A stretch of DNA of 64,000 nucleotides from Callorhinchus milii (taxonomy: Eukaryota). The stretch covers positions 9,300,001 to 9,364,000 of the forward strand of contig NW_024704765.1 of NCBI RefSeq assembly GCF_018977255.1, given 5' to 3'. The position numbers were made by a program, and so were the translations under genes. Below the pieces are notes generated by a model that made no database searches, had not been told where the DNA came from, and worked only from the letters and a program-made list of their open reading frames with translations. How positions within the stretch are numbered: the stretch's first letter is position 1; each line of letters opens with the position of its first letter. Of the stretch, positions 5,291 through 49,300 are shown piece by piece.

Positions 5291-5395
5291 GCGATGGCAT
5301 CCTTGGCCTCCACTGCTGTATCCTCTCTCTCTCCCCCATCCCGGCTGCTGCGTCTCCTGTCTCTCTTCCACCCAGAACCCACTGCCTCGCACACG

Positions 5396-5700
5396 ACCAC
5401 GACCTTTCCTGATCAAGATGCCGTACGTCATTCGTGGTCGGGCATTCAGCACCTCCGCCCCCCCCCCCGCACGCTCTGGAACTCTATCCCTCCGCCTCAC
5501 CCCCTCTCTTGCCCTCTTCAAGTCTTGTCTGAAGACCTTCCTCTTTGACCATGCCTTCGGTCACCCTCCCCACCCCTACCCGCCCTGACTTCGTCCCGCC
5601 TGACCCCAACACCCAGCTCAGGTCCAAAATCCCATGACTCTCCAGCGCCCCGGGACATCTTTCCGACGTGAAGGGCTCTACACAAGCGTAATTTGTTGTA
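5396..5700 (+). mobile_element. L2-type LINE 3' fragment
   Basis: Encodes the ORF2 C-terminal-like SLALFKSCLKTFLFDHAF, followed by a 3' tail (gggacatctttccgacgtgaagggctcta...ttgttg) shared with the copy at 31355-31812. Confidence 0.7.
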
Positions 5701-5880
5701 TATAACTACCTCTTCCGCTGGGCCTTTCTCAGCCCCCTCTTTTTCACGCGAAGGGCAGTGGAAATCTGGAACTCTCCCTTTCCCCCCCAAAAGGCTGTGG
5801 ATGCTGGATTAATTCAAATTTTTAAAAAAATTGAAATCCCCAAATTCCGGATACGGGCAGTGACTGGAGAAGCTTGTTTA

Positions 5881-6090
5881 ATAATAATAATAATAATCCT
5901 TGCATTTGATATAGTGCTTTTCACGTCCGGCGGACGTCCCAAAGCGCTTCACAGAACACACTGTAAAGAGAATTGACTGTATATTTGTGGGCGAACGCGG
6001 CAGCCAATTGCGCACAGCAATGTCCCACAAACAGTCGTAGATTGAAAATGACCAATTTATTATTGTTTTTTTTTGGAGGAACGATTATTA
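5881..6090 (-). mobile_element. tRNA/Deu SINE 3' portion
   Basis: Reverse complement of the SINE body and (TTA)n tail seen at 13644-13978. Confidence 0.85.
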
Positions 6091-7493
6091 GGCGTTTGAT
6101 TAATGGCTATGCTTATTTGATGAATGTATCTGATTTAGAATTGTATTGTCCTTGCTCAGTTGGTTGCTGGAAAGCAAGACAGGGAAACTTTGACGAGGGA
6201 CACAATACCTCATGCGGGGATTGTACTTGGGAATAGGGGATGTCACACTATTCTAACCCTCTCAATGGGTTTTCCAATCCATTCTCAGTAAAGCGCATAG
6301 AAATGTGATTCCTATGCGAAAAGAGCTGCATAAATTGCAAGTTGTTCGTCTTGTTTCTGCAGTGTCGAGGCAGCAGGTCTGTGGCAGCTGCTGTTTTAAA
6401 AGAGACATTGCACATGGCGCCATGCAGCATGACATGGTCATTCACCTCAAGGCATAAATAAACAACGCTCTGAAAACACGCATCTTCAACATCCCCAGAA
6501 CGAGCAAATAGTTTAACTTCTCATCCGGCACTGCACTGGACCGTCAGCCTGGACTGCAAGCTCAAAGCCCCCCCAATATGGGAATCGATCTCACATTCTT
6601 CATAACCCAATTTGGGATGAGCTCCCATCTCTCCTAGGAAAATCTGTGCAGCGTGGGTGAGTGCTCTATTTACAATGAATTAAAGAGCGGGGGTCTTGCT
6701 TGGGTGGTCACTGACAAACAGCAATTATAAATGGTTGATCACCTTGATCTTCAGTAATAACTGGGGCAAAATTAACCTTTAAAATAATTGGTTGCCTTTT
6801 TCCATTTCCTTCATTTAGTATCCAGAGCTCTCAACCCGTTGACAGTGGGTCAACAAACAGACGAAGAAGATAATTATCCACTTCCCTTCCGAGAAGTGCT
6901 AATAATCATTGCAATATGATGTCACGATATCTCAAAGGCCTCAGTTTAACATCTCCACCGAAGAATTGTGGGGACTCTGGTGAGCTTGGAATTAGGATCT
7001 GTGATGCTTTCTGCATTCGTTGAACACTCACTGTCTAGGCCCTTTGCATGAAGAATGTGGAGGGTTGGTGGGGGGGAAGAATCCCCAGATGGTGGAGGGG
7101 GGGAAATGCCTGTGGGTGTCTAAAATGTCAGAGACTTGAAGTTGCAACACGAATCTGGAGAGTAGGGGACACATTTGGGGGTGAGTGGGAAAGCAAGGGG
7201 ATGTGAGCAACCGCTCGGAAAAAACGCCTCTTCTCCTCATCTGCTAGCGTGATCCCAGCGTTTAAATTAATGACTGTTTCTGCAGGAAATTATTCATAAA
7301 GATGGCAATGGACGTTTTAATTTGCTGCCGCATCGTTTATTAAACCAGGCTCCGTGACTCACCTGGCAGAGTCAAGGCCTTGCAATTTAATTGCGTGTTA
7401 ATTATGCAGACCTCCCCATCGACTCCCCCACCCGAGATGTCACAGCATCAGGAAAAGACGTAAACTGTGGGGAGAGAGAGCTGCTTCCAAGGA

Positions 7494-7617
7494 GTATATA
7501 TAACGCGCGCACACAACATGCTGCATGAGAGAGAACTGGAGACAGAGCACAGAAAGCGGGAGAGAGCGAACTCACCTGCCAGCAACACCCAGACACTCCC
7601 TCACTACCCCGATCCAG
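7494..7617 (+). promoter_or_regulatory. TATA box and probable non-coding exon 1 of the osteocrin-like gene
   Basis: GTATATATAA lies at 7494-7503. A donor CAG|GTGAGA follows 7617, and acceptor AGs at 7709/7717 precede the ATG at 7720. Confidence 0.55.
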
Positions 7618-7719
7618 GTGAGATAAAATTTATTTCCTTCTTTCCTTTCTTCCGATGTCTCAGTGCATTCTGTCAGTGTTTGAGTCTGATTGCAGTCGCC
7701 TCTCTTTAGTTTTGCAGCA

Positions 7720-9137
7720 ATGTGTCTAAAGTGCTGGGTCGTGCCTGTACTGGCTGCTCTATTCCTTCCGCAGGGCTCCCCAAAAGCAGTCCCCCTGGAT
7801 GCACTTAAACAGGTAAGTCACGGCAAGATTTCTGCCTTTCTGTGTTCCATATTTCCACACGTGTACCTATTCCTTCCCTCCTTCATTTCCTTCTGTTTCC
7901 TTTTTTATACTTCCATGTTCCAATTTAAATTCAGATGTGGAGCAATGCCTTTCACTAATCGCCAGCCACGTGCATTCGCCCACAAAACACACAGTCATTA
8001 CACTTTACACAAACCCAGTGAAGCCGGTTTAAGTTCTTGATGTTATAACAACAACAACAAATTATGTTACACTCACGTTGGAAGAATGTCCCAAGGCGCT
8101 GGACATGAAGGATTTGCTTTCGAGCTAGGGGTTGGGATCACGAAGGATGGAGAACGGGGAGGGTAGGGGTAAGAGGGGGAATAAAGACACGGTCGAAGAC
8201 AAAGGTCTCGAGGTGGGCTTTGAAGGAGGCAAGAGAGAGGCAAAGAGACTGGGATGGAATTCCAATGGGTGGGGGAAGAAAGGATGAATGCAGAATGTTT
8301 CTGATGGTGGGTGGGCAGAGCAGGGGACATGGAACAGGCCTGATGCTGTATTAAATACAGGGATTAGTATTATTCTCTTGTTCTGCAGCTGGTGGAGTTA
8401 GTGGTTGCTGAGGAGGTCCTGGGTGGGATATCTCCTGCAGGAAGGGTCGAGTCAGACAGCTTGGGTTTCGTGGAAGAATTGGACTCCTCGATGGAAGACG
8501 GATTGAAGATCGGAATGGAGCAGAAGAGGAGTTTCCCCAACTTTGGTCTGCCTCTTGACAACCTGTCTGTGTGGCAAGCCAGAAACAAACAGAGGTAACT
8601 GTGACTTTGCCGTGCTTAACCCTTTCCCACCCTACACTCTTTCTGAGAACTTACCCTCAACAGGACCTTTCACATGGGCAGTGTGTAACATTTTACATGG
8701 CATTCATAAAGTAAACCAGAACCGTAATTTAGAATGGAGCCAGTACAGCAGAACAAGAGGATGCAGGTTTAGAGTTGCAAAGGGACAATTTCAGTTCAAG
8801 CAGTAGGAAGTTTTTCTTTATCCAGTGACAAATCAACAACTGGATAATCAACGTTGCTGGGAAGGGTGGTTGAGACCCGGACACTGGGACTCATTTAAAG
8901 AATAGCTTAGGGTGGGTGTGCTAGAAGGATGAGATCAGATGGGTTGAAGAGACGGGTGGAGGGGAAAGAATTGGTGGGAAAGCTCCCAGAGAAAAAATAG
9001 CCTCTTATTACAATTCCGATGAATGTTCTTCCCAAATTTGTTTCTGCAGAAGCTTCCCGCAGATTCCCAAGCCGCGGTTTTCCGCGCCTCTGGACAGAAT
9101 AGGGAGTTCCCGGCTCTCCTCCCAACGCCTCGCCTAA
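7720..9137 (+). CDS. Osteocrin/musclin-like prepro-hormone (128 aa), probable OSTN paralogue
   Basis: Exons 7720-7812, 8389-8594 and 9050-9137 (GT-AG, phases 0 and 2) give MCLKCWVVPVLAALFLPQGSPKAVPLDALKQ|LVELVVAEEVLGGISPAGRVESDSLGFVEELDSSMEDGLKIGMEQKRSFPNFGLPLDNLSVWQARNKQR|SFPQIPKPRFSAPLDRIGSSRLSSQRLA*. It has a signal peptide, an acidic pro-region, a KR site and two natriuretic-peptide-like motifs. Compare human OSTN KKKRSFSGFGSPLDRLS...PKRRFGIPMDRIGRNRLS. Confidence 0.9.
8045..8340 (-). mobile_element. L2-type LINE 3' fragment in intron of the osteocrin-like gene
   Basis: Reverse complement resembles the L2 end at 31560-31812 (WNSIP..., gcgccttgggacatt, (caa)n tail). Confidence 0.65.
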
Positions 9138-10484
9138 TGCCAAGTGCCGCCCGGGGTGACCCTCCTTGAGACGTAAGAGAAACGAAGATGTGTTGTGAAG
9201 ATTTCTCTGTGACTGGAACTCGCTCGGGCAAGTAGCTGGGGGATGGGGATGGGATGGGGGTTGGGGGATGAGGAGGAGACAGCCCGGTCGGTGTGCACCA
9301 GCAGTTGTGTGTTGTCTGTTGTTGCATTCTCTCTGTCTGCGTGCAGGGTTTTGTTGTGTTATTTACTGCAAGAGAGAGAGGCCTGAAAGGAACTGCGTTT
9401 ATGTGTTTGCAAGATAATAAATATTGGGGGGAAGGGTTGGCGGAGGGTGGGGGAGGGGTGAGTGCGCATGAGTATGGGACGTGACTTTGTGTTCTGCATC
9501 GGTTTCTGTGCCAACCGGGCAAGATTGGTTGCCACGGTGACTGTCTCCATGTTGGATACCCCCTCTCTTCTCCCCTCCTCTACACATACTGTTCACCTGT
9601 TCACCTGTTCAAAGTCACAGCATGAAGGTGATTTCAGTGGCTTCATTAAAAAAAGCATAATTGTTTTTATTTGGGGGAGATTGTGGACTTGACTGTTCCC
9701 TTCAAAGGAGCTGTGGTGCTGGAGGAATAAAGGTCTCTTTCAAAGCATCTCTCGTGCCTTGTTTCACTGGTGATGCCTGTGGCTGGAGGGCATAAACTTA
9801 AGATCATCAACAAAAGGGAGAGCGGGGGGTAGTCAGGGGGAATGCTTATTATTACAAACAGAGGATTATCCGGAGATGGAATGACCTACTCCGGTGAACA
9901 TTAATGATCCCGTGGCGCTATTGGAACAGATACCATCCGTGTGATGATAATGATAGTCCTTACATTTGATATTGTGCCTCATCATTTTGTTGAGACATCT
10001 TCACAGAATATACTGTAAAATGGAGTGACTCTATATTTTGTGGATGAAATGTGGCAGACAACAACAACAACACGATTGCATTTATAGAGCGCCTTTCACT
10101 TCGGGAGGATTGCACACAGCAGTGTCCCACAAACAGTCGTGGATTGAGGGACCAAATTTCATCAGGGTCAGGTGGGGGGAAAGGAGGGAAGAGAGGGGAA
10201 TAGATTCCATGGGGAGAGGAGAAGGGAAAGGCCTGACAGGGGCACGAGTAGAAATAATTTTCCGTTTGAACATAAACCACCAAAAGTGTTTTGCAAAACA
10301 TACAGGGATTTTATTGGTAAGATTGAAACAGAAAAATTAGCAAACACTTTGCCATTATTCTTTAATGCTGCTGCCTTTACTCAGTTCAGGAACACATATA
10401 CTGTATCTTCCAACAGGGCACAAAATAGTAACCGCTCCCTGGGTGGAGGGGGGGAGGTGGGCGCGCAGGAGCACCAGGTGCTCC

Positions 10485-12444
10485 TCAAACGCAGTATTTC
10501 CAGAAACACTCAGAGAAATTGTTGCATTTTCTATATTGTCTCTCCTCCAATCCCATCGGGAAGCTGACCTCGGACCACTGAGATCTCCTCCCGTCCAGGA
10601 TCTGTAGAGAGAGAGAGGGAAATCACATCAGTGTCAACTGCTGTTCAATGCATCTTCTCCGCTCGGTATAAGAGCAAACGACAATAACAACAGCAGCTTG
10701 AGTGAGTGAGTGAGTGTGTGTGTGGTGGGGGGGTAGTGGCAGGAGGGGGGAGCGGAGGCTGGGGGTAGTAGGGGCTGGGATCCTTTTATATTCACCTGAA
10801 TCACATCTTCACAAATTTCCCCAGGTCTGGAAAGGGCACACCCTGCTTATCTAATTTCAGAGAGAACTGGGCACAGGTTGGCAAAAGCCAAAGCTTGAGG
10901 GAATCTCAGAGTGTGTGAAGGGGCACTTGCTGGAGCTTAATCAGCTAAAACCGCTCGGTTTGTTTTGAGAGCAATGTCCAGGAAGCTTCCTGCTGCTTGT
11001 GGACTTGTTAGGGCTTTGGTTTGCAGGGTTAACAGCCACACATCTTACAAACAATGAGTCAAATAAATTTGAGTGGGGGCTTTTTTGTGGTGGGGTGAGG
11101 GTGTAAATTTAGATCTGAAGAGAGGTCTCGGAGTGTCGGGGTGGTGGGGTGTGGATTTGACCTGTGTATTATAATTATATTATTATTAGAAATATAATTA
11201 GCGCCTTGGGACATCCTCCCGATGTGAAAGGCGCTATATAAATGTAATCTTGTTGTTGTTGTTGTGTACATTCACCTCAATGAGATTTCCAGTCGGGGAG
11301 AAACTCTTCCACTTCACACCTGCTGAAAGCAGAGAAAATCAGAGAACCAAACTCAGTGAGAGTCTGGAAGCCGGAGGAGACAACAGCCCTTTGACCACAG
11401 ACATCTGTGGATTCCTACAACGTAGGTTAGAGCACTCGCCTCGCAAGCGAGAGGACCTGGATTCAATTTCCAACCGGGAATTGGGAAACCTTAGGCATTA
11501 TTCCTTACTCCACACGTCTCTGTTTACCTCTGCAATAAGTGGTGTTCCGGCGGTAATAATCCCTCCAAAAATAATTAAATAATCATTAAATCGTCTCCCA
11601 CAAAGTACACAGTCAATCCACTTTACAATGTATTCTGTGAAGTGCTTTGAGACGTCTCGAAAAACAGGGTACCAATGCAAGGATTATTATATTATTATCA
11701 CAGGAGATGAAGGATTGAGTCTGAGGTGCAAATAATACAATAATATTCCAATAATATTCCATTGTAACAAAAGTGGGGTAAAGATTCTTCTTGTTAAGGT
11801 ATAAGCACAATGCCCGTGGGTGGCCAGTAGGTGGCAGTCTTCACATAAACCAGGTTCATTCACATCAATAATTGACCCAACTTCACCCTCAAATAATAGA
11901 ACAAAGTATGGGGTTGGGGGGGGGGGAGTCTATGAAACCTACCGCTCTTGTGGTGACGTTTAGCTTCTTCTCCGGTTCTCGTCAGATCCAGAAGGCTGTT
12001 CCCAAGCAGGATTGCAGGGACGCCGTGGAGGTGGTGAGAGCTCCGCATTCCATCCCTACTCAGCGTCTCCTCACCTCTACTGAAGACTGGAACGAGAGTT
12101 ATGAGGGTGGGGATGCGGGTGGGGTGGGGAGAAGCTGGGAAGGGAGGAGGGAAAGAAAGATACAAGTTTTTTTTAATATAATAACAACAACTTGTATTTA
12201 TATCCCGCCCTTCATGTGGGATAGCGTCTCGGACCACTTGCTTAATAGCAATAATAATCCTTGCATTTTGATAAGCTGTTCCCCTTCTCTCTCCCAACCC
12301 CACCCCACCCCTCGCACTGTCGCTCTTACCTCCTCTGCTGTATTGGGAGTCGGATACAGGAAGGCAGAGGACACCGGGGCGGCAGAACAGCAACGCACCC
12401 AACAACAGCATAAGATCATAACGAGGGGAGACAGAGAGCAGCAT
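10485..12444 (-). CDS. UTS2: Prepro-urotensin II (140 aa)
   Basis: Exons are 12444-12330 (signal peptide MLLSVSPRYDLMLLLGALLFCRPGVLCLPV...), 12086-11943, 11322-11276 and 10601-10485 (ILDGRRSQWSEVSFPMGLEERQYRKCNNFSECFWKYCV*), with phases 1, 1, 0. The CFWKYCV ring preceded by an acidic residue and an NNFS extension matches shark UII (dogfish NNFSDCFWKYCV). Confidence 0.95.
11821..11838 (+). promoter_or_regulatory. CTCF-like motif
   Basis: TGGCCAGTAGGTGGCAGT is a close match to the CTCF core consensus. Confidence 0.5.
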
Positions 12445-12468
12445 GCAGACCCCAAGCGCTCAGCCCAT

Positions 12469-12494
12469 GCCTTTATATAACTGCCTTTATATAG
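12469..12494 (-). promoter_or_regulatory. Tandem TATA boxes upstream of UTS2
   Basis: The minus strand reads CTATATAAAGGCAGTTATATAAAGGC, 25-50 bp upstream of the ATG. Confidence 0.6.
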
Positions 12495-14901: not shown

Positions 14902-14932
<31 letters not shown>

Positions 14933-17160: not shown

Positions 17161-17411
17161 AATCGGTGTGTTGGTGCCTGAAAGGAGAGCAAGTAATGTG
17201 TAATGAATTGCACTGATTAATGACATTGAATCCCATCAGCAAATTTTTCAGGAGTTTTTAAATTCAGATTTTTTTTTTGTTGGAGTCCCAGCAGGGCTCA
17301 GGTCCCGATCCCCGCTTTAAACCTTCCTCCCGCTGCATTTTTATTTCATATTATTTTCCTTTTCTTCCAGAGTTGCTCGGAGCATGTGCGCCGAGGTTTG
17401 ACGCGAGAGCA

Positions 17412-20400
17412 ATGGCTGAGATCGCGATCGATCAGTCCCGACTGCCGCGGGTTCAGGAGGGTAAGATACAGGAAACGTTCAGCCCCGTGGGGGGAGTGCG
17501 GGGGTCATGATATTCTCAAGAACTTTCTCTTCGACTGCGCCTTGGGTCATCTTCCACCACCTGCCCCCCCGTCCCAAATACCCACACCTCTCTTGACTGC
17601 AGACCGCAGCTCGGGGCATCCTCCTGAGGCGAAGGGCACTGCGTAAATGCAATTTGTTGTTGTTGTGTTCCTATCACTGTTACCCTCAGCCCCCACCCGA
17701 AACCTCATCCCGGCGCTCTCTTCCGTGTCCCTTAATCTTTTTGCGGCTCTGTTGCTTATCCAGTTTCCATCTGAACGATTCAAGCTGCCAGCCTGCAGTC
17801 CAAGTCTCTGAGTCAGACAGATGGTTGTGGGTTCGAGCCCCACTGATTCTCCAGCGCAGTGCTGGGGGGAGAGAGTGGGGGGAGCACTGAATTGGGTGAA
17901 TTATTAAACCCAGGTCCTATCTGTGCCTCTCTAGCTCACAGTGGTCAGTCTCTAACTGTGAAGGAACTGCTCTGTCTCTTTGTCTCTGTCTCTCATTCCT
18001 TCTCTCCTTGTCTCTCCCTCACACCCCCTCGATTTTTTTCCCTCCCCCTCTATTAGGATGTGGGCAGTGTGTAATGTCTGCTTGCAAGCCACAAATTGTC
18101 GGCTGGGCACGAGTGTGACTAAATTTCCTGGTTTCCTCACAACCTCTATTTAGAAGTGTCCATCACCGCAGTGGAGGATGGAGCTGAGCCGTGCTCCACC
18201 CCAGGGATTACTTTCATGGCTCCACAACGTTTTTGACACAACAAAATCCCCCCACCCCCCTGCCCTCCACACTAGGCATTCCGTGGAAACAGGAGGAGGC
18301 CATTCAGCCCCTCGAGACCTGTTCCGACATTCTATAAAATCATGGCTGATCTGTACCTCAAGCGCTCTGGGAGGCTCCCATGCATGAGAGGCGCTATATA
18401 AATGCAAGTTGTTGTTATTTATTGCTTGCCATCTGCCTCCCCCTCCCTTTGGTTAAGTCAGAGTCTTCTTTGGGGTGGGTGGGGGGAAGCAGAAGGATAA
18501 ATTGGCTTGGTGATGCTCTGGGTGTTATGTGGTCTGACCCCTGAACGTGTCTTCTCTCTCTCTCTCTCGTGTGTGTACAGTGTGCCGGGGATTCGCGTTG
18601 CTGGAGGATGGAGCCCTGGCCCACAGTCTCCAGGAGCAGGAGAGTAAGTGAGGACCCACCTAAACCCCCCACCCCACCCCCCCACCACTCTGGTCTCAGC
18701 CACTTTGGGGGCCTGTGTGACGCAGACCGTAAGCGCTCTGTCACGTAGCGTAGCGGTTAGAGCACTTACCTCGCATGCAAGAGGATCCGGGTGCGATTCC
18801 CGGGCAGCGCAAATTCTTAGGTAAGTTTCCTTACTCCACACGCCTCTGCATACCTAGCAGTATGCACGCACCCAGCCAGTAAACGCGGGTCCCCACGTAC
18901 GAACTCGGGCAGTGACTGTCGGTGCCGTGTTGCTGTTGCAGTTGAACAACATTACGCCTCCAACGTCCAGAAGAGCCAGCTGGTGCGGCAGGACGTGCGA
19001 GTGGCCAAGATCCTACAGGACCAGGAGGAGCGCCAGGCACGGAGTCACAGCCGCGAGGAGCAGAGCAGGCAGGTCCCACTCCCCGGGGGGTGTGCGTGTG
19101 AGTAGGGTGGGTTGTTAAGCGCCCCCACCCCCCCCTATGCTCCCCTCCCTGCGACTTGAAAGACCTTCCTTTTCGACCTTGCTTATGGCCACCCCCTCCC
19201 TTCCACACACACGCAAACCCCCACCTGGCTCCCGTACGCTGCCCCATCTGAATGCCGCTGTGTAAATGCTATTTGTTTTTGACGCTGTGTCTGGGGGAGT
19301 GGTGGGGTTTGACACTGCGTTGGGGGTGGTGGTTGGGCTGTGCCGGGGAGTGGGGGGGGAAGCTGGTAGGGGGGCGTTTGATGCTGTTTCTGAGTTGGTT
19401 TGATGGTGTGCTGGGGGGGGAGGCTTGGGGTTGTGTTTGAGGGGGTAAATGGGGCATGTGCTTGTTTGAGGGGGTGATGGTGGGGGGACAATGGGGGTGG
19501 GGTGGGTGGGGAGACTGACGCTGTGTACTGAGGCGGGATGGTGTTGTGTGTGTGCGCAGGGAGGAGCAGGACTCTCAGTATGCCCGGGCCGTGCAGGAGG
19601 AGATTCACAGCCGAGCAACTGAGCGGCATCGGCGGGAGGAGGAGGACAAGGTAGGGCTGTGGAGGGTGTTGGTGGGGGGGGTGTGTCTCTCTCTCTCTCT
19701 CTCCTCACCACCCTCTCTCATCTCTGCCAACTCTGTCTGAAACGTCTCATTAAAACCAGATCAACCATTTCTCTAATGAGCTCCCCCCCACAGTGACTAG
19801 CAGATGTGGAGAAATATCACTGTGTCGAGTTGGGTTTGGTTGAGGGCCGGTCTGAGCCCTGGGATGTCTCCCAGCAAGTGAGGTGAAGTGCCTTCCCACC
19901 CCCTACCTTCTCCTCCCACCCCCACCCACCACACCGATTCCTGTGGCTGGCAGTAAATATGAGAGCTGAGTGTGGGGGGGGGGAAACGGATAAGAGGAAG
20001 GCGAAAGCTAAGCACGGTGCCAGCCTGCAAAAGGTTGCTCGGAAAAATACCCATCTTTTTGCCAAGAACAATCTGGGCTGATCCACCGTTTCCATCGAGT
20101 GCAGACAACACGCCAGTCTGTTTATATATAACACCCGCTCCAGGGCAGGTTCCTGCAGACTCCCAGCCCCGGCCAACAGCTCACACTGAGGCAAACTCTC
20201 ATCATCATAATAAGCCACGTGTTTGACACTGTGTGAGAGAGAAAAAGACGGAGCGAGCGAGACAGGGGAGGGGGAGAGAGAGAGACTGAGAAAGCCCTGC
20301 AGTGTCAGAGATGTTGTCCTTTGAGACCATCTGGGCTCCATGTCCAATGCAGGGGGGCAGGCAGGCGTGTGCACTTGCGGGCGTATGTGTGTGAGCGCGT

Positions 20401-23400
20401 GTCTGTGCGCGTGTTCCTGTGCAGGTCTGAGTGACCACGGGTTTCTCCCACCTCCTTCCCCCCCACTTCGGATTAATTACAGATGTTAAATGCGTGGCTA
20501 GACCTGGCAGAGCCCTCACGGTGCCTGACACCAGGTGCGTGTGTGTGGAGGGGGGGAGGCAAGGGATTTAATTGTCTTGGCTCCTTTACGAGCTGGTTTT
20601 ACTGCAGATGAGACGTGCGGCTGAGTCTGATTTATGGCTCGACAGTCAAGACAGAGACGGGCAGGTCTGAGACGCTCACACAGTGCAATGTGAGACAAGG
20701 TTTCACAGTTACGCTGACTTTGGCTGTTTCAACTCCCTGACCAGACAGTCCTGGATAGTGCAGCATCTTCTCCATCTCTCCTGTTTTCCTTTTTCTATTT
20801 TTTTTCTTTTTCTCTCTCTCGATTCCTCTCTTTATTTCTTTTTCTCTCTCTCTCTCTTTCTCTCACATACCATCGAAGGGCGATGGCTGTAACCTTCTCA
20901 CTTTGAAGTACGTACCCTCCCAGCTGGTAAACGTGCCTCTGATTACAGAAAATGTGCAAAACAGCCTGAGACTGAGTTAAAAAAACAGCAAACTGTTCTG
21001 ATAATTAATATTAGGGGAAAAAAAACACACACGCAGACAGTGGCTTTAATGAGCTGCAGGTTGAGGCTGAGTGTGAGGGGTCTATGGAATCAGTAGGGGA
21101 GATGGTTAGTGGCACAAGGTACTGGTTGGGGGGAGACTGACCCCCCTATCCAACCCGCTCTGATCACGCACACCCCAGAGCTCAGAATGCTCTGGGGCTC
21201 TACCCTGCATGGAGGGCGCTATATAAATGCAAGTTGTGGTTGTTGGTTTCCTCTGTGGATTCACAGCAGCTCAGACCAAAGGGTATGGGGGCGAGGGGGC
21301 TAAGGGAACGATGGGGGAGGGAGGGGTAAGGGAGAGAGAGAGACAGACACAGAGAGAGAGAGAGAGAGAGAGAAAAACGAAGGGGGAAAATTTATCCCAT
21401 CAGCCTGAGCTGGATTAAGCCTCGCTCCCCAGCAAGTGGGTGCCGTTTGGTGGTTTGAGCCCAGGCAGCTGGTGACACAGACACGGGAAAGTCGCGCACT
21501 TTACAAAGGAGTTAATTAATTTTTTTTCCTCCCACTTTCGTCCTGCCACTCCCAAACTCTCCGTCTCTGGTCTAATATTACCGCACAGCCCGGGGCTCAG
21601 TCCAGCCTGCCCTACCGCAACTCACTAAACACAGTTAATATTCCGTTCCAAAACAAAGACATGTGAGACGACTGATTTAGACGTCTCAAAGCGCTTCACA
21701 AGATACACTTGTCAAGCGGATTCACTCTATATTTTGTGGGCAAAACAAGGCAGCCAGTTGGGCACAGCAGAGTATCCCACAAAGAGTGGTGGATCAAGTG
21801 ACGAATTTGATTTCATCGTTGGCCAGGACACCGGAGAGAAACTCCCTTCTCTTTCCGATTGGGAAAAATTCCATTTGAATGAGTAGTGTCACAACGTCCA
21901 CCTGAACAGACAAACAGCGCTGTGTTCGCGCTGACAGGGTGCGCCAAGCTTGGCCGCGAGCTCAAACATCGCAGTTCCGCCTGCACGACTGCACAGACTG
22001 CACAGACTGCACATCTGCACAGACTGCACATCTGCTCACCACTGTACCATCGCACTAACCCTCCTCGCTGGGGGCAGGAACAACAAATGCCCAACAAATC
22101 CCAACAAATCCCCCACCCCACCCCCCCAAATAAAATTGGTCACTCGCTCCACGGCCGTCTGTGGGACACTGCCGCGCGCACCAGCTGCCGCGTTTCGCCC
22201 GCGAGGTGCACGTGTCAACCCCCTTTACGGCATATTCTGCGAAGGGCTGCGCGACGTCTCGGCGCCGCGGTCGGGGGCGGCTTCGGACCTCCGGGATTCT
22301 GATTGTGTGCTCTGCGTTGCTGGAGTGTGACCGGCGAAGGCTGTGGAGCGTTGGCGCCCTCCTGTGGGCAACCGCGCAGAGAGCGACGAGCTGCCCTGTC
22401 TCGCTCGGGCAGCTTCCCGGCACGGCTACCGAGCGGAGGCTCGTGTCCCACCAAAACACTAAGGGGGTGGGGGGAGGGGGGGAAGTTGCACTGTAACTCT
22501 CCGCCAACTCTCCTCTGTCTGTCCGTCTCGGTAACGAGTGACTAATTTCACGCCTCGCAATTGCAGGAAATAGCCCGCAGACTCCAGGAAGAGGAGGAGC
22601 TGCGGAGGCGGGAGGAGGAGGGGCAGGAGGATGCCCTGCCCCCGCCCGCCGAGGAGGTTCACAGTGAGCTCGGGGGCGGGGCAGGTGAGCGGTGGGGCGG
22701 GGTATGCAGGAGATGGGGTGGGGCAAGCCGGGAGGGGGTGGGTGGGGGGGGCGCGGGGACTGGGAAGGTGAGCGGGGGAGCGGGGCAAGTGAGAAGGGGG
22801 CGAGGTAGGTGGCAGAGATGGGGGCGGGGCAAGCAGGGGCGGGGCAAGTCAGTGTGGGGGTGTATGGGAGGTGGACTTGCTCAGTGTGTTTGGGCTACAG
22901 TGACCGATGACCTGTTTCTCTGGTGGGCAGGGATCGGGGCGTGGTCTCTGGAGAGGGGCACAGCCAGACTCGGGATCCGGGACCCTCAGCACGGGGAGCA
23001 GCTGCCGGAGACGGAGGGGCTGCGGGGGGACGAGGAGCTGGCCAGGCACTTACAGCAGGAGGAGGAGACACGGCTCGAACAAATGGTCCGTCCGCAAAAC
23101 CTTCCGCCCCCACCCCCCCCCACCCCCCCAGGACGAGAGCATGACTGATCGACGGGCGCGGTGGGATTGTTCGCTGTGGGGCATGTAATTTCCGCCTCTC
23201 ATTCCCAACCCACATCCACGTTTCGCCTACAAAATGCACGGTCACTCCACTTTATATTATATTCTGCGAAGCGCTTTGAGACGTCTCAACGACGTGATAA
23301 GGGGCCGCATCAAATGCAAGGAATATTATTATTATTATGGTTGTAACTGTGTAACTAATTGCCTTTTACAGCAATCACAGAGTCAGAAGAGCCGGGAAGA

Positions 23401-25164
23401 AGATTTCCGAGTGGCACAAGTGGCCCAGGACGAGGTAACGTGTGGCTGGACAGGACGAGTGTGTAGGGTGGGGTGGGGTGGGGGGATGTTGTCGTGACTG
23501 TGGTGACCGATGGCTGGCCTCTGCTGCAGGAGATTGCTCGCTTTATCCAGCGTCAGGAGCTGAAAGCTCAGAAACAGGCGGAGGAGGCCGGCACCGACTA
23601 CGAGAGGACCTGCCATCGCGACGGAGTCCGGGAGAAACGGGTGAGAGGCCAGGGTGGGGGGGAGGGGAGAGGTGGGGGCTGAGGGAAGGCCGGTGTGGGG
23701 GGAGAGGCTGTGGGAGGGGTGGCTGGGAGAGGCTGTACATAAGAATTGCTAGACAAGAGAAGACCAAAGTCCATCCAGTCCACCTTCCACCATCGTAGCA
23801 GAGTGAAAGCTTGCCGGACAGTGATATCAATGGCAAGCTCTGTGGTTTCAGCTGGTTAGACTCGAGCAGTTACCCCAACGCATGCTCTGGGTTCCCCCCC
23901 AAGCCTTGGTTCTTGCCAACCTGCGCTTAAGACTTTCCAGAATTAGGTAAGCAAGGATGCCACAATCTATCTCTGGGATTTCCGTGTCTAGGTGGGATAC
24001 TCTTAAGCACGGTGATGGGTTTCCGCATGTGTCTGGCCGACCCCCAGATAAAAAAAAATCCTGACAGTCTTATGCATGTGTCGTGACCCAAACTATATAT
24101 TGTACTGGACGTTAGGAGACGAGGAGGGTTTGAACATCGAAGGTTGTGTTTTCCTTTGCAGAGCAGCAGGGCAGGGGGCCGGGGGGAGAGGCTGAGATCC
24201 GTAGGGATGGCGAGTGGTGAGTGGACACGCCCAAGAGAGGACACGTCCATGGAGCACGTGCGGAAAGCCAGGTGGGTCCAGCGGATCTGGAACTCTCCCC
24301 CTCCCCCAAAAGGCTGTGGATTATGGGTTGGATCCATTCAAATTTTCCAGACCGAGGTGCATAGATGTTTGTTAGGTCATGGGTATCAAGGGATTGGGGG
24401 CAACGGTGGATCATTGGACTTGAGGTACAGATCAGCCATGATCTAATAGGATGGTGGAACAGGCTCGAGGGGCTGAATGGCCTCCTCCTGTTCCTAGATG
24501 GTTCCATAGTGAACAGTGCCGATCTGCAGCCATCCTGAACTTTGGAATCTGTTCCCATTTTGCAGGCAGCTTTTCCCCAGGAACATCGCCGAGGCCCTGG
24601 ATCCCACCTTCAAAACCCAAAACACAGACGTCTCCCAGCCTGAGCCACACTCTCCTCTCACACCAGGTAACAGCGCTTGCTCCGAGGGGGTGGGGGGAGA
24701 GGATGGAGGGAGGGGCAGGGGGCTGTTATTCTCTACACTTTAACCCCCAATCCACGACTGTTTGTGGGACACTGCTGTGTGCAATTGGCTGCTGCATTTC
24801 ACCCACAAAATACAGTCAATTCACTTTACGACGCAATAAGGCATGCTATAATCAAACCCAAGAATTATTATTATTATTGTTGTGATATAAGCCCTGGAGA
24901 TTGCTGGCTGGAGCTGTTTTGGGGGTGGGGGTGTTCAGTGTGGTGTCAGTGTGTTGCTCACAGACTTCCCCCCCCCCCCCCCCCCGCCACCTCCCTCCCC
25001 TTCTTACAGAGATGTGCGGGTCCTGCCCGGTGCCCCCCGGTGGTCTCTATGACTACATGGACGACAATTCCGAGCCTGAGTTCATCCCCCCCACCCGCCG
25101 TCCCCAGGAGAAGCTCCCGCGGCAAAAATCCAAGGACAAGAAGGAGAGCTGCAAACAGCAGTGA
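17412..25164 (+). CDS. CCDC50 (Ymer)-like coiled-coil/MIU protein, 380 aa, C-terminal CKQQ; probable paralogue
   Basis: Exons are 17412-17460, 18581-18643, 18942-19068 (GC donor), 19560-19650, 22567-22684, 22931-23085, 23372-23434, 23530-23640, 24162-24271, 24566-24666 and 25010-25164 (1143 nt, open frame). The N-terminus [60 protein letters not shown] matches human CCDC50 [47 protein letters not shown]. It has repeated DxExARxLQ MIU-like motifs. Confidence 0.88.
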
Positions 25165-43300: not shown

Positions 43301-46300
43301 TCTGAGACGTTTGGGGAGAATCGACTCCACGGTCGGTCGCTTTGCCTCGGCTCCGGGTTTCGGTGCCCCTCTGTCGGCCGGGCCTGCGGAGCGCCGCGCC
43401 GTGTGCCGCGCGTCGCTGGTATTCTCAGTGTGCGTTGCCTCTTTGTCTGTCTCGCCAGGAGATGAAAGGCGTCCACAGGTGGCAACGCACAGGGCGACCC
43501 AAGTCCCGAAGGCACGCACAGAAATAAACACGGGGCGGGAGAGGGTCGTGGATTCTGGCGAAAGATTAGCAGCACATTTTATTAGTTGAAGCATTTCTCC
43601 TTCCTACAGTACTGTGCACTTGTGTCTCGTCGCCACCGTCGCCCCCTGTTTTGCACCTAAAACATAATAAAATTTGGTCACTCGCTTCGTGGCTGTTTGT
43701 GGGACGCTGCTGTGCGCAATTGGCTGCTGTGTGTCATCCGCGGTACACGCAGTCACTCCACCCTACAATATATTCTGCGAAGCGCTTTTAAGACGCCTCG
43801 CCCAGGCGTGCGGCAGTGCGCCATACTCCAACGCAAGGCGTGTTAACTAGTTATTTGCATTGTCGTTTGAAACCTCTGGCCCCCGTTTGTCAGGCTGCGC
43901 CACTGTTAAACGCTACCCCGATAGATAAATGCGAGTTGTTGTCGTCGTGAAAGTGTCATTCGACCCATTCTTTCCACGTTCGCCTTTTCCCTTCTCATTC
44001 CATTCCATTCCAGACACCGGAATTGCCACGTGTCGGTGGCGTGCACGGAACTCTGGCTGGTTTGGACACGCTTAAGCACGGCGATGGGCTTTCTGCCCGT
44101 GTTAGACCCCCCCCCTCCCCGCCCCCCCACCCACCGGCTGACCAGAGTTTTTTAAAAAAATAATCTTCTGGTTCTAAATCTTAAATTTTTCGTAACTTTA
44201 TATTAAAGAAAAAGTCCACGTTTCAAATTTTGCGAGTTTAACCGGAAGAGGGTTTTTGTTAAGACTTTGTTTTGGGGAACTGCGCCCAACAAAATCCACC
44301 GTATCTCCACTTTACAGTAGATCCTGGGAAGCGCTCTGAGACGTCTCAACTACGTGATAAGGCGCTATGTCAAGTGGCCGTATTATTATGATTATTATTC
44401 ACAGCTTAAACTGCGAAGTGCGGAGATTGTGTGGGTGAAACGCAGCAGCCAGTTTGCGCGCGGCAGTGTCCCACAAACAGCCATGAAGGGAATGAACGAC
44501 CACATGTGTTGCTGAGTATCAAGCCTTCGGGTGGTTAGAAAGGTGGGTTCCCAGAGTAATCTACATTTCGTCCATTGCCCTCAATATACCGTCAATCCAC
44601 TTTACAGTGAAGCGCTTTGAGGCATCTGAATGACGCGATAAGACGTTATATAAGGCAAGGATTATAATTATTATTATTTTTGTTGTTGCTCGACTGGAGA
44701 GGACCTGAACGCAGAAGTCGTTAATGTAAGAGTTGCCTGAGGCGGGCAAGCGGGGCGAGTGTTGACCTTGAGGCCTTTCAGATTGAAGCTCCCTGGAGCG
44801 CAGCATGTGTTGTTAATTTCCCAAAGGATGCCCGTCTTTCCTGCCTCAGCCCGTGGACATAACGGTGGTTGTGTCTTGTGGTGAGGCCACATGTGTAAAC
44901 AGGGCTCCAGCCAGCTGTCGGGTTTGGGGAAAGCCGCCTGGTGCCAGTGTCGGCCAAGCCGTGACTTTGAGCTGCTCGTATCTCTTCTGTGGCTTAAGTG
45001 ACGCAATGAATCAATGAATCCGAGTCCGAGAGAGAGAGAGAGAGAGAGATGTCTCTCTTTGTTTCAAACAAGGTGCCTTTGTTCACTGACAAAATACGGT
45101 CGCTGCACATTGCAACGAAGCCCCCGAAGTGCTTCGAGATGTGGCTGATGCGAAAGGCATCGTCTGCAATGCCGTTCACGTTTGCTGCGCATAAACAGTA
45201 GCGCCTTTCGCTTCGGGAGGACGTCCCAAAGCCCGTTCACAGCGTTGGGGTTGGGAGACGAGTGGGGTACGGAGGGGAAAGGTGACGGGTGTGGTGAGAT
45301 TACCTGGGGTTCATCTCACTCAGCCCCCAAACCCAAACCCTAATGGGTAAGTAGGGTGGTCCTGGCTGGGCAAGCTTGCCAGGCAGTGAGGACACTATGC
45401 TACGTGCCTTCCGCTGGTTAAACCAGCAGTGCTCCAATGTAACAAGGCCTGGCTCTTGCTCACCTTGTGTCCAGTCTCCAGCGTTAGGGTGCACCCCTCC
45501 CAAGGAGAAAGTCTGGCCCCTCCATTCCAAACGTGGGGAACTCTCCCCGTGTTGGTCACCTCCGCATGTGGGGCTTTGCCTGGTTTCAATGCTCTTAAAC
45601 AGGTTGATTGGTTTCCACGTGTGTTCCAGACTTCGTCTGACAAACACAAAGAGCTGCGCACAGATGGGATTAGACAGGACAAGGGGGGGGGGGGGGGGGG
45701 CGTTCTTTATATCAGCCGAGGGGGGGAGGGAGTTGAATGCTTCTCCCCTCGGCACAGCTGTCAGGCTGCCTCGGGCTGCGTCTGTTGTGTGTTTGGCTGT
45801 AAGAGCTCTGTGTGGAAAAAGCCTTTTTACTCCCAATGTTAAGGTCGAACCATCAATGAATTTGGATTAATTTCATTTTTTGAGTGTTTTATTTTTTTTT
45901 GAGTGTTTCTACAGGGTGTGGGGGGTGGGGGGGGGGGGTTGGGCACGGGGTATTTACCGCATTTGGTTTAGAATCGTTGCTTGAATTGTCTTAATTGTTT
46001 GTCGGTGTCTTCCCCCTCCACCCTCTCCGCTTTCTCCCATAAAGCGCTCAGCTGCGTCGATAGAGAGATTGCATTTTTAGGTCTCGTGCCGTATTACGTC
46101 AAAGTAATCCCGTGAAGCACTTTTGAGACGTTCCTTCCTTCCGAAGTGATACACCAAAGATTATTGGCATTATTATTGTATAATGCTTTTCGAATAGTGC
46201 TGTGGGATCAGTTATCGTCCACCTGCACAGGCGCAGACAGGACCTGGGCTTTACATCTCATCCGAAGGAGAGGATTGGGTGCGTGTTGCAAAGAAACCTT

Positions 46301-49300
46301 TTTTATTAACCGGCCACTTTTTTTTTTAAACTCTCCCTTTGCTTTCCGCAGGAAGAAGCCAACTCACGTGGAGGTGAACTGCTGGTTCTGCAGCCAGGAC
46401 ACGACCGTCCCCTACGGCAACAGGAACTGCTGGGACTGTCCCAACTGCGAGCAGTACAATGGCTTTCAGGAGGTAAGATCCTCTGCGGTTTCTGAAATAG
46501 CGCAGGTCTGGCTGGTGACATGTCCCTTGTGCCAATCTTCGTAGCGGTCAGTGGGCTCCCCTCGCATCCAAGAGGACCCGGGTTCGATTCCCAGGTTGGG
46601 GATCACTCAAACCGCGACTGTTGGTTCGGACGCCGCTGTGCGCAATTGGCTGCCGCGTTTCGCCCGCGAAATACGCAGTCAATTCGCTTTCCGGTACGTT
46701 CTGCGAAGCGGCTTCGAGACGTCTCAACGACGTGATAAGGCGCTACGCACAACGCAAAGATTATTCCGGCTCTGCCGCTGCGATCGGCCGTTGGAAAAGA
46801 GGAGGGAGTTTAGTTGCTCGTTCCCGGTGTCCTGGCCAACAGTCGCCCCAAATAAAATTGCTCACTCGCTCCGTGTGCCGTCAATCAATTCGCTTTACAG
46901 TCTATTCTGTGAAGCGCTTTCAACGACGTGATCGAAGGCGAGGGTTATTATTATTATTGTTTGCTCGCCGTCTTAAACAGACGCCCTCTAGTCACTGCCT
47001 GATGACGAGTCCCGTTGACGTACTTTCTGTTCCGTTCTCTCAGAACGGTGACTACAATAAGCCGATACCTGCTCAGTACATGGAGCATCTGAATCACATG
47101 GTCACCAGTTGGACAAGTCCCACGGAGGCGAGCAAGGTCCAACAGTGGCCGAACGGACAGCTTCTCTTCTGCAAGAAGTGCAACAGCAACCAAACCCTGA
47201 AGGTCAAACAATTGGCTTCCTTCGTACCAAGAGATGAGGTGGGACACACTTTTATTTGTATTTATTTTTTGAACCTGTAAGCGGTTTAAAATTCTTTATC
47301 AGTTGAAAGAATCGTTGAAAGAATCGTTCACTCACCACTTGGTCTTAGTGTTCATCTTATTTGGGACTGTCATTCCCTCAAACAGCCCTAAAGGTAATTG
47401 ATCAGTTTTATCTGGGGGACTGTGGCTGTTTTTTCTCTCTCTCTCTCTGTGATTGACTTGTAAGGACATCAGTGGCTTATGCGATTCAAATATTTTACAA
47501 AAAATAAAACGCTCGAAGGCTCGTGCAGTCTCGCCCCTTACTGTGCGAGTGTGGCGCTTTGGTGGAGAGTGTACTGTCGAGGTGGATTGATTGTAAATGT
47601 GTTTTCATCCCGTTCCACTGGTTAAACCGACGCCTCTTCTTTATCTTTCTCGCCTGCTTTCTCCCCCAATCCACTACCCGCTCAGCCTCCTGCTCATCCC
47701 CGCTACACCTACTGACTCAAGTCGTGCGTCGAGCCCGTGTCCCTTTGCAACCGCCGAGGATAGTTGGACCGTGCGCAGTGCAGTGATATCAATGGGGACA
47801 GCAAAGGGTGCTTTGGTCCAGTCAGTAACGACGTGCGTTTGCAGATGGAGGCGTTGTGCGTCGGTGCCCAAGGTTATTGGTGGCGTTGAAAAGAGAGAGG
47901 GAGAGAGAGAGGGAGAGAACTTTGGTCACCTTTTACTTTGACTTAATCCTCATTGGCCTTTCTCCGGAGCATTTTGAGAGTCTCCACGGAGCTCGAGCAG
48001 GAGTAGATCTTCGAAGAGCTTCGTGGAGCCGTCGCTCAGGAAATCCCGTCTCGTCCGCAAAATACTCCACTTTGCAGCACACCCCGTGAAGCACTTCGAG
48101 GCGTTCTCGACCCCGTGACGTACGCAGGGATTATTACTGCCGTTGAGGCGACAGCTGTCAAGCCTTAAGAAACAAGGAGGGATGTCTTTTTTTTCTGACC
48201 TCGTGACCGCGATCCGTTCAATTTCAGGCGAAGGAAGGCCCGGATTGAACTGCGCAGCCACCCCTCCGTTAATCCCGAAATTCCTGAGTTGTTTAAAGCG
48301 CAGTCGGGTCGTGGAGAAGTTTCCACGTTGAAGGGTAACCAGGTGCAGGTAGAGAGCGATAAGATCTGGTCACGTCTACTGCCCCTCGGCCGATGGCTTT
48401 TCATCCAGTGACGGGCCAAGTTAGTCTTTCCTTCGTCTCGTACGATATTCCCAAAGCGGGAAGTGGATTTCTCTTCAGGGTGTTCTTCCCAGTGGCCACA
48501 TCCAATGGCTAATAAGTGCAAGTTGGTGTCGACGTCATTTCCCCCGTTGCTTTTGAGGGCAGCTCCTTTGCTGCGCAGATTCATACAATGATAAATCATC
48601 AACAACGCATCTTAAACACTGAACTCCATTGTGATTTAAGTCTATTTTGGGTCTTGCTTTTCTCTCCCTCTCTCTCTCTCTCTCTCTCTCACACTGCTGC
48701 AGCCATTAACGATCAAGATTATTTGCTAATTTACGTCCGCATTATTCACTTTGAAAAGGAGTATCCGAGGAATATCTAAAGGGCGATTGCGCGTGAGAGC
48801 GAGCGCGAGAGTTGGGTTCAGGTTAAAGTGCGGAGGCAAATGCGCGGTCGCTCTGCCCTGAGTTCGTTTTGAAGGACTGGTTTCCGCTCCCGTTGACAGG
48901 ACAGGTACGAGGACGAGATTGAGATGTACAAACACCACCTGGAGCAGACGTACAAGCTGTGCCGTCCCTGTCAGACGGCTGTGGAGTATTACATCAAACA
49001 CCAGGACAGGCAGATCCGAGCCATTCTCTTCGATCACCAGCTCCGGCATCGAGAAGCAGACAAAACTTTTGTGCAGGTAAGAGTAGCGGGGGGGGTTGGG
49101 GTGGTGGGGGTGGGGTGGGCAGAGGTTCCGGAGGTCGGCGAGACCTTAGGAGTAAAGATTTTTTGGTTTTATATAAAGTCGCTAGGAACGTTATCTGCTG
49201 CGATTATTAATTATAACCTGGTTCAGCTCAGCAAATCTAGACAACCCTTATTCTGCTTATTACGACTAGCAATAATTAATAATAATCCTTGCATTTGATA

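What the first reader, a model, noticed from the sequence alone, without database searches (positions are those of the whole stretch)
7720..9137. A second osteocrin/musclin-like hormone gene ('OSTN2') in the UTS2 locus
Seen: an intact 3-coding-exon, 128-aa precursor that the ORF track shows only in fragments. It has a signal peptide, an acidic prodomain, KR|SFPNFGLPLDNLS and a C-terminal FSAPLDRIGSSRLS. Known: osteocrin carries two natriuretic-peptide-like F-G-x-P-L/M-D-R-I/L motifs without the disulfide ring, binds the clearance receptor NPR-C (NPR3), and is single-copy in human at 3q28 beside UTS2B. Inference: because this copy lies beside true UTS2 and among human 1p36 genes (ZBTB48, TNFRSF9, TMEM201), it is an ohnolog absent from human. 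That would make it an uncharacterised natriuretic-system modulator in this lineage.
Basis: partly seen in the sequence, partly recalled or inferred. Interest (0 to 1): 0.9.

Follow-up and report, generated by a model that had tools for sequence, protein, structure and literature searches.

The report
Osteocrin-like hormone gene beside urotensin II
This is a real, spliced and transcribed elephant-shark gene for an osteocrin/musclin-type secreted peptide that sits next to the urotensin II gene, so it may be an old duplicate of osteocrin that humans lack, although public databases already list it as "osteocrin-like".

Summary
Coding exons 7720-7812, 8389-8594 and 9050-9137 (+) give 128 codons plus a stop. 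All three introns are GT..AG. They are spliced out in contigs of two probable RNA runs from one study, and are continuous in a DNA run.

Exons 2 and 3 each hit Pfam Musclin PF11037 in colinear order. The matching public protein scores 49.2 bits against a cut-off of 21.

The gene is not new as a prediction. It is RefSeq XP_007900317, "osteocrin-like", of Callorhinchus milii.

The neighbours are as claimed in kind:
- a urotensin II gene lying tail-to-tail with it,
- a CCDC50-family gene,
- a weak TNFR-like exon,
- TMEM201.

"ZBTB48" could be confirmed only as a BTB zinc-finger gene.

The ohnologue reading ("OSTN2") is the best fit (about 0.55) but is unproven. No tool let me search the rest of this genome for another OSTN or fetch canonical OSTN sequences for a tree. 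None of the 10 paper searches listed a title on an OSTN paralogue or a cartilaginous-fish osteocrin.

The parts
6950..6979 (+). 3' end of an upstream non-coding exon (its start was not determined), spliced to 7410
   Evidence: Loose ends of X1/X2 contigs before 7409 equal window 6950-6979. Donor GT is at 6980 and acceptor AG at 7408-7409.
7410..7617 (+). Non-coding 5' exon. It holds upstream ATGs at 7437, 7518 and 7525, and a TATA-like run at 7495-7503 that could be an internal promoter (inference).
   Evidence: X1 contigs cover 7409-7540 and 7535-7617. The 7617>7710 joint is GT..AG. uATGs are.
7710..7812 (+). First coding exon. CDS runs from ATG 7720 and gives 31 aa with a signal-peptide-like hydrophobic core.
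   Evidence: (joint 7812>8389 in X1 and X2).
8389..8594 (+). Second coding exon: acidic propeptide, KR site (8524-8529) and first natriuretic-like motif FGLPLDNL (8542-8565)
   Evidence: Pfam Musclin E=1.1e-4. Spliced on both sides in X1 and X2. Motif scan.
9050..9137 (+). Third coding exon: KQR and KPR sites, second motif FSAPLDRI (9078-9101), stop at 9135-9137
   Evidence: Pfam Musclin E=1.1e-3. Joint 8594>9050. Motif scan.
9138..9440 (+). 3' UTR (contig support reaches 9226) with an AATAAA at 9416. The end is inferred.
   Evidence: The X1 contig reaches 9226. The poly(A) signal scan is.
10485..12444 (-). Urotensin II gene, tail-to-tail with the osteocrin-like gene. The last exon, 10485-10601, ends ...RKCNNFSECFWKYCV*.
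   Evidence: Sequence. Pfam Urotensin_II E=1.7e-5. The first-exon ORF starts at 12444.
17400..25164 (+). CCDC50-family gene, head-to-head with UTS2
   Evidence: Pfam CCDC50_N hits consecutive exons: 18983-19102 (profile 50-77, E=0.006) and 19546-19737 (profile 78-109, E=4.3e-5). Exon 1 and the terminal exon were read from ORFs only.
46146..50418 (+). TMEM201 exons, a marker of the 1p36-type region
   Evidence: Pfam Ima1_N (E=2.6e-8 and 3.1e-11) and DUF2448 (E=1.8e-29).

Best explanation
This is the Callorhinchus milii gene that RefSeq predicts as 'osteocrin-like'. It is an expressed gene of at least five exons, three of them coding, for a 128-aa prepropeptide of the osteocrin/musclin family.

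It forms a triplet in the order osteocrin-like(+), UTS2(-), CCDC50-family(+), inside a region that also carries TMEM201 and a TNFR-like gene. The most likely history is that an OSTN-UTS2-CCDC50 block existed before the two vertebrate genome duplications. On that view this copy is the UTS2-side (human 1p36-type) ohnologue of the OSTN that bony vertebrates keep beside UTS2B.

The likely mode of action is inferred:
1. The signal peptide is removed.
2. A prohormone convertase cuts after KR77-78 and releases a basic, cysteine-free 50-residue peptide. Further cuts after KQR100 or KPR109 are possible.
3. The two linear natriuretic-peptide-like motifs occupy the clearance receptor NPR-C. This would slow clearance of C-type natriuretic peptide and raise cGMP signalling.

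Shown here: gene structure, splicing, family membership and neighbours. Inferred: the ohnologue status, the processing and the receptor.
For: Structure and splicing:
- Searches give the exon model.
- One search shows the three coding-region joints and the 7617>7710 joint, all GT..AG. X1 carries all of them and X2 carries the two inside its contig. X1 and X2 have zero depth in the non-repeat parts of the introns, and DNA run X5 has 0 such joints.

Family:
- One search gives exon-wise Musclin hits in colinear order.
- scores P0001 at 49.2 bits against a cut-off of 21, E=6.2e-13, residues 58-126 on profile 63-131.
- One search lists three PF11037 clusters as the nearest in the ESM Atlas (0.96-0.95).

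Identity: one search gives XP_007900317, osteocrin-like, C. milii. P0002 is identical to the window over the 128 residues. P0001 differs at 1 of 128.

Neighbours:
- One search gives Urotensin_II E=1.7e-5, Ima1_N, DUF2448, and TNFR_c6 E=0.025.
- One search gives CCDC50_N on two consecutive exons.
- The UII family is held to be four paralogues from the two genome duplications (PMC4364556, abstract and introduction passages).
- An earlier unchecked note places natriuretic peptide genes 5.35 Mb away on the same piece.

Function: osteocrin is described as the intrinsic, specific NPR-C ligand that augments CNP (PMC9219612, passages). Residues 79-128 have no Cys, and the KR, KQR and KPR sites are present.
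Against: - No second OSTN was seen in this genome, because the genome could not be searched. The scan's notes cover only 904 windows and were blank.
- No tree was built. The full-library HMMER search with exon 2 found 1 protein at E<=0.001, which was the gene's own product. The word-index searches found only that same protein (37 candidates, 1 candidate). So neither shark orthologues nor canonical OSTNs could be compared.
- ZBTB48 and TNFRSF9 identities were not confirmed.
- Each motif departs from the canonical F-G-x-P-L/M-D-R-I/L at one position: DNL in place of DRL in motif 1, and F-S in place of F-G in motif 2. Receptor binding may therefore be weakened.
- Spliced contigs come from one study only (X1 and X2 of P1). 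X3, from another study, showed none.
- The runs are labelled RNA only as a guess, and the tissue is unknown.
- Transcripts with the long 5' leader carry an out-of-frame upstream ATG at 7525 that overlaps the start codon.
Confidence: 0.55

Rival explanations
1. It is the only OSTN-family gene of the elephant shark and a plain orthologue of OSTN. On this view the OSTN/UTS2-type/CCDC50 block is the same locus as human 3q28, and the 1p36-type neighbours reflect rearrangement or a mistaken UII/URP assignment.
For: - The triplet order and orientations equal those recalled for human OSTN/UTS2B/CCDC50 (the human order is recalled).
- No other OSTN or CCDC50 note exists for this genome.
- The public collection shows only this one C. 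milii Musclin protein among my hits.
Against: - The urotensin peptide has a five-residue extension and an acidic residue before the ring. That is the UII pattern, not the URP pattern (the rule is recalled).
- TMEM201 and a TNFR-like gene lie within 40 kb.
- Both the Musclin and the CCDC50_N scores are low for a slowly evolving genome (exon-wise 17-25 bits). That fits divergent paralogues, though the argument is soft.
Confidence: 0.25
2. It is a lineage-specific copy. A segmental duplication or transposition in holocephalans placed an OSTN copy, or the whole triplet, next to UTS2.
For: No relative other than the gene's own product was found in 1.84 billion representative proteins at E<=0.001. 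This would fit a gene restricted to one lineage.
Against: - A recent copy should resemble its parent closely, yet no similar protein was found at all.
- Introns are retained, so it is not a retrocopy.
- The neighbour is a UII-type gene, not a duplicated URP-type gene.
Confidence: 0.05
3. The gene is transcribed, but its peptide no longer acts on NPR-C. It has either taken another receptor or is drifting towards loss.
For: - Motif 1 lacks the Arg of D-R-I/L and motif 2 lacks the Gly of F-G.
- Two non-synonymous polymorphisms lie in the propeptide (8417 V>A, 8516 M>T).
- There is an out-of-frame upstream ATG in the long leader.
- Human osteocrin fragments were reported to activate GPR1 and GPR68 in screens (PMC6838683, passages).
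Against: - The reading frame is intact, and splice sites and processing sites are kept.
- Motif 2 keeps P-L-D-R-I-G.
- Both polymorphisms lie outside the predicted mature peptide.
Confidence: 0.15

Closest known systems
Osteocrin / musclin (OSTN; Pfam PF11037)
   Same: - The Pfam Musclin match is above the cut-off (49.2 against 21 bits).
- The precursor is short: hydrophobic N-terminus, acidic propeptide, then a KR site.
- Two linear natriuretic-like motifs sit in a Cys-free basic C-terminal peptide.
- It is adjacent to a urotensin-family gene and a CCDC50-family gene.
   Different: - Only profile positions 63-131 match. The N-terminal half does not.
- Motif 1 reads D-N-L and motif 2 reads F-S.
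- The neighbour is UII-type, not URP-type, and the wider region carries TMEM201.
- It is too divergent for pairwise searches to reach any canonical OSTN.
C-type natriuretic peptide and other natriuretic peptides (Pfam ANP)
   Same: It shares the short D-R-I-G-type core of the receptor-binding loop (the motif comparison is recalled). It probably shares the clearance receptor.
   Different: - The mature region has no cysteines, so there is no 17-residue disulfide ring.
- No Pfam natriuretic-peptide hit appeared at E<=10.
- It would be expected to bind NPR-C only, not the guanylyl cyclase receptors (inference from osteocrin).
Human 3q28 OSTN-UTS2B-CCDC50 gene block
   Same: It has the same three gene families in the same order and relative orientation: (+), (-), (+). 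The first pair is convergent and the second divergent (the human layout is recalled, not tested).
   Different: The middle gene is UII-type, and the flanks are 1p36-type (TMEM201, TNFR-like) rather than 3q28-type.

Membership tests
Osteocrin/musclin family (PF11037) | Match to the family profile above Pfam's gathering score | tested here: met
   P0001, the public protein of this gene, scores 49.2 bits against 21, E=6.2e-13. Exon-wise: 22.5 bits (exon 2) and 19.3 bits (exon 3), colinear.
Osteocrin/musclin family (PF11037) | Two natriuretic-peptide-like motifs (F-G-x-P-L/M-D-R-I/L) with no disulfide ring | tested here: met
   FGLPLDNL lies at 8542 and FSAPLDRI at 9078. These are the only two hits in six frames of 64 kb. 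Residues 79-128 have 0 Cys. Each motif departs from the canonical form at one position.
Osteocrin/musclin family (PF11037) | Secreted precursor: signal peptide plus a dibasic processing site ahead of the motifs | tested here: inconclusive
   KR77-78, KQR and KPR are present, and there is a hydrophobic core at residues 5-15. No signal-peptide predictor was available, and cleavage has not been shown.
Osteocrin/musclin family (PF11037) | Specific binding to the clearance receptor NPR-C (NPR3) | not testable with these tools
   This needs a peptide-receptor assay. The property is documented for mammalian osteocrin (PMC9219612, passages).
Orthologue of OSTN proper (3q28-type locus) | Position beside the URP-type gene (UTS2B), with 3q28-type flanks | tested here: not met
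   The neighbour peptide is UII-type, with an extension and an acidic residue before the ring. TMEM201 and a TNFR-like exon lie nearby. No 3q28-type flank was seen in the window.
Orthologue of OSTN proper (3q28-type locus) | Groups within OSTN orthologues in a gene tree | not tested
   No canonical OSTN sequence could be fetched.
2R ohnologue of OSTN ('OSTN2') | Lies in the paralogous (UTS2 / 1p36-type) region, with paralogous neighbours conserved | tested here: met
   UTS2, a CCDC50-family gene and TMEM201 were confirmed by Pfam. The four UII-family genes are attributed to 2R in PMC4364556.
2R ohnologue of OSTN ('OSTN2') | A separate OSTN lineage coexists, in this genome or in outgroups, and the split dates to 2R | not testable with these tools
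Findings look-ups were blank.
Natriuretic peptides (ANP/BNP/CNP) | 17-residue ring closed by two cysteines | tested here: not met
   There are no Cys in residues 79-128, and no natriuretic-peptide Pfam hit at E<=10.

The most novel reading that the evidence does not exclude
The OSTN-UTS2-CCDC50 triplet predates the two vertebrate genome duplications, and the elephant shark keeps a UTS2-side copy of all three genes that bony vertebrates have lost. This would mean osteocrin separated from the ring-bearing natriuretic peptides before 2R. It would also mean that cartilaginous fish, whose only natriuretic hormone is CNP (recalled), have a previously unstudied clearance-receptor decoy peptide that tunes CNP signalling.
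Probability: 0.5. Interest if true: 0.6.

Novelty: new member of a known kind. Interest (0 to 1): 0.5.

Why it matters
Osteocrin is treated as a single-copy modulator of natriuretic-peptide clearance with roles in bone, muscle, heart and the primate brain. A second, anciently duplicated copy would do three things:
- date the origin of the ringless osteocrin lineage to before the vertebrate genome duplications;
- add a marker block (OSTN/UTS2/CCDC50) to the 1p36-3q28 paralogy;
- offer a natural sequence variant, with one changed position in each motif, for asking which residues NPR-C really needs.

In a fish with CNP as its sole natriuretic hormone, it is a simple system for testing clearance-receptor competition. 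The claim is tempered because the gene is already predicted in RefSeq and its paralogue status is still untested.

Tried and rejected
Relatives by sequence
- A full HMMER search of 1.84 billion representatives with exon 2 returned 1 protein at E<=0.001, the gene's own product.
- The word-index search with P0001 gave 37 candidates, and only the same protein at E<=1.
- The same search restricted to residues 72-128 gave 1 candidate, again that protein.
- No phylogeny was therefore possible. One homologous-protein search was left unused, because exon-sized queries cannot reach full-length CCDC50, ZBTB or TNFR proteins under the length rule.

Solved structures: 4 matches at E<=10, none related (LRR/Rab, acyl carrier and antifreeze proteins). 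I rejected these as chance.

ESM Atlas
- It supports the Musclin family for P0001.
- For the BTB zinc-finger ORF it names ZBTB49, 46, 24 and 9, not ZBTB48. The ZBTB48 label is therefore unconfirmed.

Pfam on CCDC50-like ORFs: 0 hits on 22561-23145, 24677-25201, 17277-17507, 23473-23679 and 24901-25161. Only the two N-domain exons hit.

Papers: 10 searches.
- Judged from the listed titles and abstract starts, and from the passages I read, none concerns an osteocrin paralogue, a chondrichthyan osteocrin or an OSTN gene beside UTS2. I read passages in only six of the listed papers, and two searches listed only part of their hits (20 of 2,615; 20 of 33).
- One search was too broad to be useful.
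- PMC4992253 lists one OSTN in a cichlid (passage).
- PMC5016917 places sunfish osteocrin between Gmnc and Iws1 (passage).
- I did not ask for any supplementary files. Synteny tables in supplements of urotensin-family papers might bear on the claim.

Earlier findings: 6 counted look-ups and 2 word errors. Nothing lay beyond this window except a natriuretic-peptide note 5.35 Mb away (unchecked).

The 167-aa RefSeq isoform (P0002) starts at ATG 7525 and needs acceptor 7696. The laid contig uses 7710, which puts 7525 out of frame. I therefore prefer the 128-aa product.

I did not fill or look up the N stretches (419 N).

Full report
**What is there**

- Exon 7720-7812 translates to MCLKCWVVPVLAALFLPQGSPKAVPLDALKQ.
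- Exon 8389-8594 runs from LVELVV... to ...EQKRSFPNFGLPLDNLSVWQARNKQ.
- The split codon AG|A gives Arg.
- Exon 9050-9137 gives SFPQIPKPRFSAPLDRIGSSRLSSQRLA and then a stop.

Exon lengths are 93 + 206 + 88 = 387 nt, which is 128 codons plus a stop. All internal boundaries are AG/GT.

**Is it more than chance?**

Searched exon by exon against Pfam, exon 2 matches Musclin (PF11037) at E=1.1e-4 on profile positions 64-105. Exon 3 matches the same family at E=1.1e-3 on positions 110-131, so the two hits are in the right order. Exon 1 has no hit, as expected for a signal peptide. A six-frame scan of all 64 kb for the natriuretic-like motif finds it twice, and both hits are in this gene.

**Transcription and splicing**

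Of the 12 runs listed for this stretch, none is on record as RNA. Four small-share holders are guessed to be RNA. I laid X1, X2 and X3 (putative RNA) and X5 (DNA) on 7400-9500.
- X1 holds a 569-nt contig lying on 7535-7617 / 7710-7812 / 8389-8594 / 9050-9226.
- X2 holds a 372-nt contig lying on 7773-7812 / 8389-8594 / 9050-9175.
- All joints are GT..AG once the stated cut shifts are applied.
- Outside repeats, intron depth is zero in X1 and X2.
- X5 covers the exon-intron boundaries continuously (pieces 7400-8002, 7980-8332, 8311-8775 and 8755-9219) and shows none of these joints. The spliced form is therefore RNA and not a retrocopy.

The limits are these. Both spliced contigs come from one study. 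X3, from another study, has no exon contig. These are contigs, so expression level, strand and ends are not shown, and the tissue is not known to me.

The contigs add a 5' non-coding exon at 7410-7617. They also add a further upstream exon ending at 6979: the loose ends before 7409 equal window 6950-6979.

**Identity**

The full-library search with exon 2 returned a single protein, P0001. That protein is XP_007900317.1, "PREDICTED: osteocrin-like [Callorhinchus milii]". Its cluster mate P0002 is XP_007900317.2, 167 aa.
- P0002 is identical to the window over the 128 residues. P0001 differs at one residue, position 92, L against V.
- The window is therefore elephant-shark DNA, and the gene is already an automatic RefSeq prediction.
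- P0001 as a whole scores 49.2 bits on Musclin against a cut-off of 21, E=6.2e-13, with residues 58-126 on profile positions 63-131.
- Its three nearest ESM Atlas clusters all carry PF11037.
- The 167-aa isoform starts at ATG 7525 and needs an acceptor at 7696. The laid contig uses 7710, which throws 7525 out of frame. I therefore favour the 128-aa product, which also places the hydrophobic core at the N-terminus.

**Anatomy of the product**
- A hydrophobic core lies at residues 5-15.
- Residues 21-75 have 12 acidic against 4 basic residues.
- After KR77-78 comes a 50-residue, cysteine-free, basic tail.
- That tail holds FGLPLDNL (residues 83-90), KQR100, KPR109 and FSAPLDRI (residues 110-117).
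- Compared with the family motif quoted in the finding, motif 1 has Asn in place of Arg and motif 2 has Ser in place of Gly.
- The two polymorphisms seen in reads (8417 V>A, 8516 M>T) lie in the propeptide.

**Neighbours**
- Tail-to-tail with this gene lies a urotensin II gene on the minus strand. Its last exon, 10485-10601, ends ...RKCNNFSECFWKYCV* and hits Pfam Urotensin_II at E=1.7e-5. The five-residue extension and the acidic residue before the ring are UII features rather than URP features (a recalled rule).
- Head-to-head with UTS2 lies a CCDC50-family gene. CCDC50_N matches consecutive exons at 18983-19102 (profile 50-77, E=0.006) and 19546-19737 (profile 78-109, E=4.3e-5). Five other ORF pieces of this gene gave no Pfam hit.
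- Further on are a weak TNFR cysteine-rich match at 30838-31134(-), E=0.025, and clear TMEM201 exons (Ima1_N E=2.6e-8 and 3.1e-11; DUF2448 E=1.8e-29).
- The upstream gene at 2411-3379(-) is a BTB zinc-finger gene (BTB E=1.2e-21). Neither Pfam nor the Atlas singles out ZBTB48.
- An earlier, unchecked note places natriuretic peptide genes 5.35 Mb before this window on the same piece.

**Interpretation**

The family call is secure. The location in a UTS2/TMEM201-type region is well supported. So is the fact that OSTN-like, UTS2 and CCDC50-like repeat the order and orientation that I recall for human OSTN/UTS2B/CCDC50.

The UII family is attributed to the two vertebrate genome duplications (PMC4364556, abstract and introduction passages). 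The simplest history is therefore that the whole triplet was duplicated, and that this is the UTS2-side ohnologue of OSTN.

The decisive tests could not be run:
- The rest of the genome could not be searched.
- The findings index was blank.
- No canonical OSTN could be retrieved.

The rival that this is simply the shark's only OSTN stays alive at about 0.25. Even under the ohnologue reading, "second" may not hold within this species if the 3q28-type copy was lost.

**Function**

By analogy with osteocrin, which is described as the intrinsic specific ligand of the clearance receptor that augments CNP action (PMC9219612, passages), the 50-residue tail or its fragments would occupy NPR-C. This is inference. 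The two motif departures and the out-of-frame upstream ATG in the long leader are reasons for caution. Screens have also linked human osteocrin fragments to GPR1 and GPR68 (PMC6838683, passages).

**Novelty**

None of the ten full-text searches listed a title on an osteocrin paralogue or a cartilaginous-fish osteocrin, judged from the listed titles, abstract starts and the passages I read. The library lacks most subscription journals, and I did not ask for any supplements.

The gene is best filed as a new member of a known kind. It is already predicted, uncharacterised, and of moderate evolutionary interest.

Noticed in passing
window 10485-10540 (-): The urotensin II precursor reads ...YRKCNNFSECFWKYCV*. 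A Cys follows the RK site directly, so cleavage after RK would leave a third cysteine on the peptide. Another first-stage note (s1-904257) says the same.
   Followed up: partly
window 7525-7617 and 7696/7710: RefSeq's 167-aa isoform (XP_007900317.2) starts at ATG 7525 and needs acceptor 7696. The laid RNA contig uses acceptor 7710, which makes ATG 7525 an out-of-frame upstream ORF overlapping the main start codon.
   Followed up: yes
window 7968-8038 (intron 1) and 8749-8961 (intron 2): Summed contig depth rises to about 1,600-18,700 at 7968-8038 in all four runs laid. It rises to about 50-200 at 8749-8961 in X1 and X5. These are highly repeated elements inside the introns.
   Followed up: no
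window 13617-13928, 34992-35369, 37901-38167 and others: A repeated element recurs many times on both strands. In one frame it reads ...[34 protein letters not shown]..., and it is probably a SINE-like repeat of this genome.
   Followed up: no
window 9265-9500 and beyond: Run X3, from a different study, has a 408-nt contig at depth 37 between the osteocrin-like stop and the UTS2 3' end. It runs past the AATAAA at 9416. It may be a long UTS2 3' UTR or another transcript.
   Followed up: no
window 24901-25164 (+): The last ORF of the CCDC50-family gene ends ...KSKDKKESCKQQ*, a basic stretch followed by a C-x-x-x end. Another first-stage note (s1-904371) reads this as a prenylation motif.
   Followed up: no
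window 15.6 kb, 33.3 kb and 50.3 kb: Three N stretches total 419 N, and one lies inside a TMEM201 exon region. They were left as they are.
   Followed up: no
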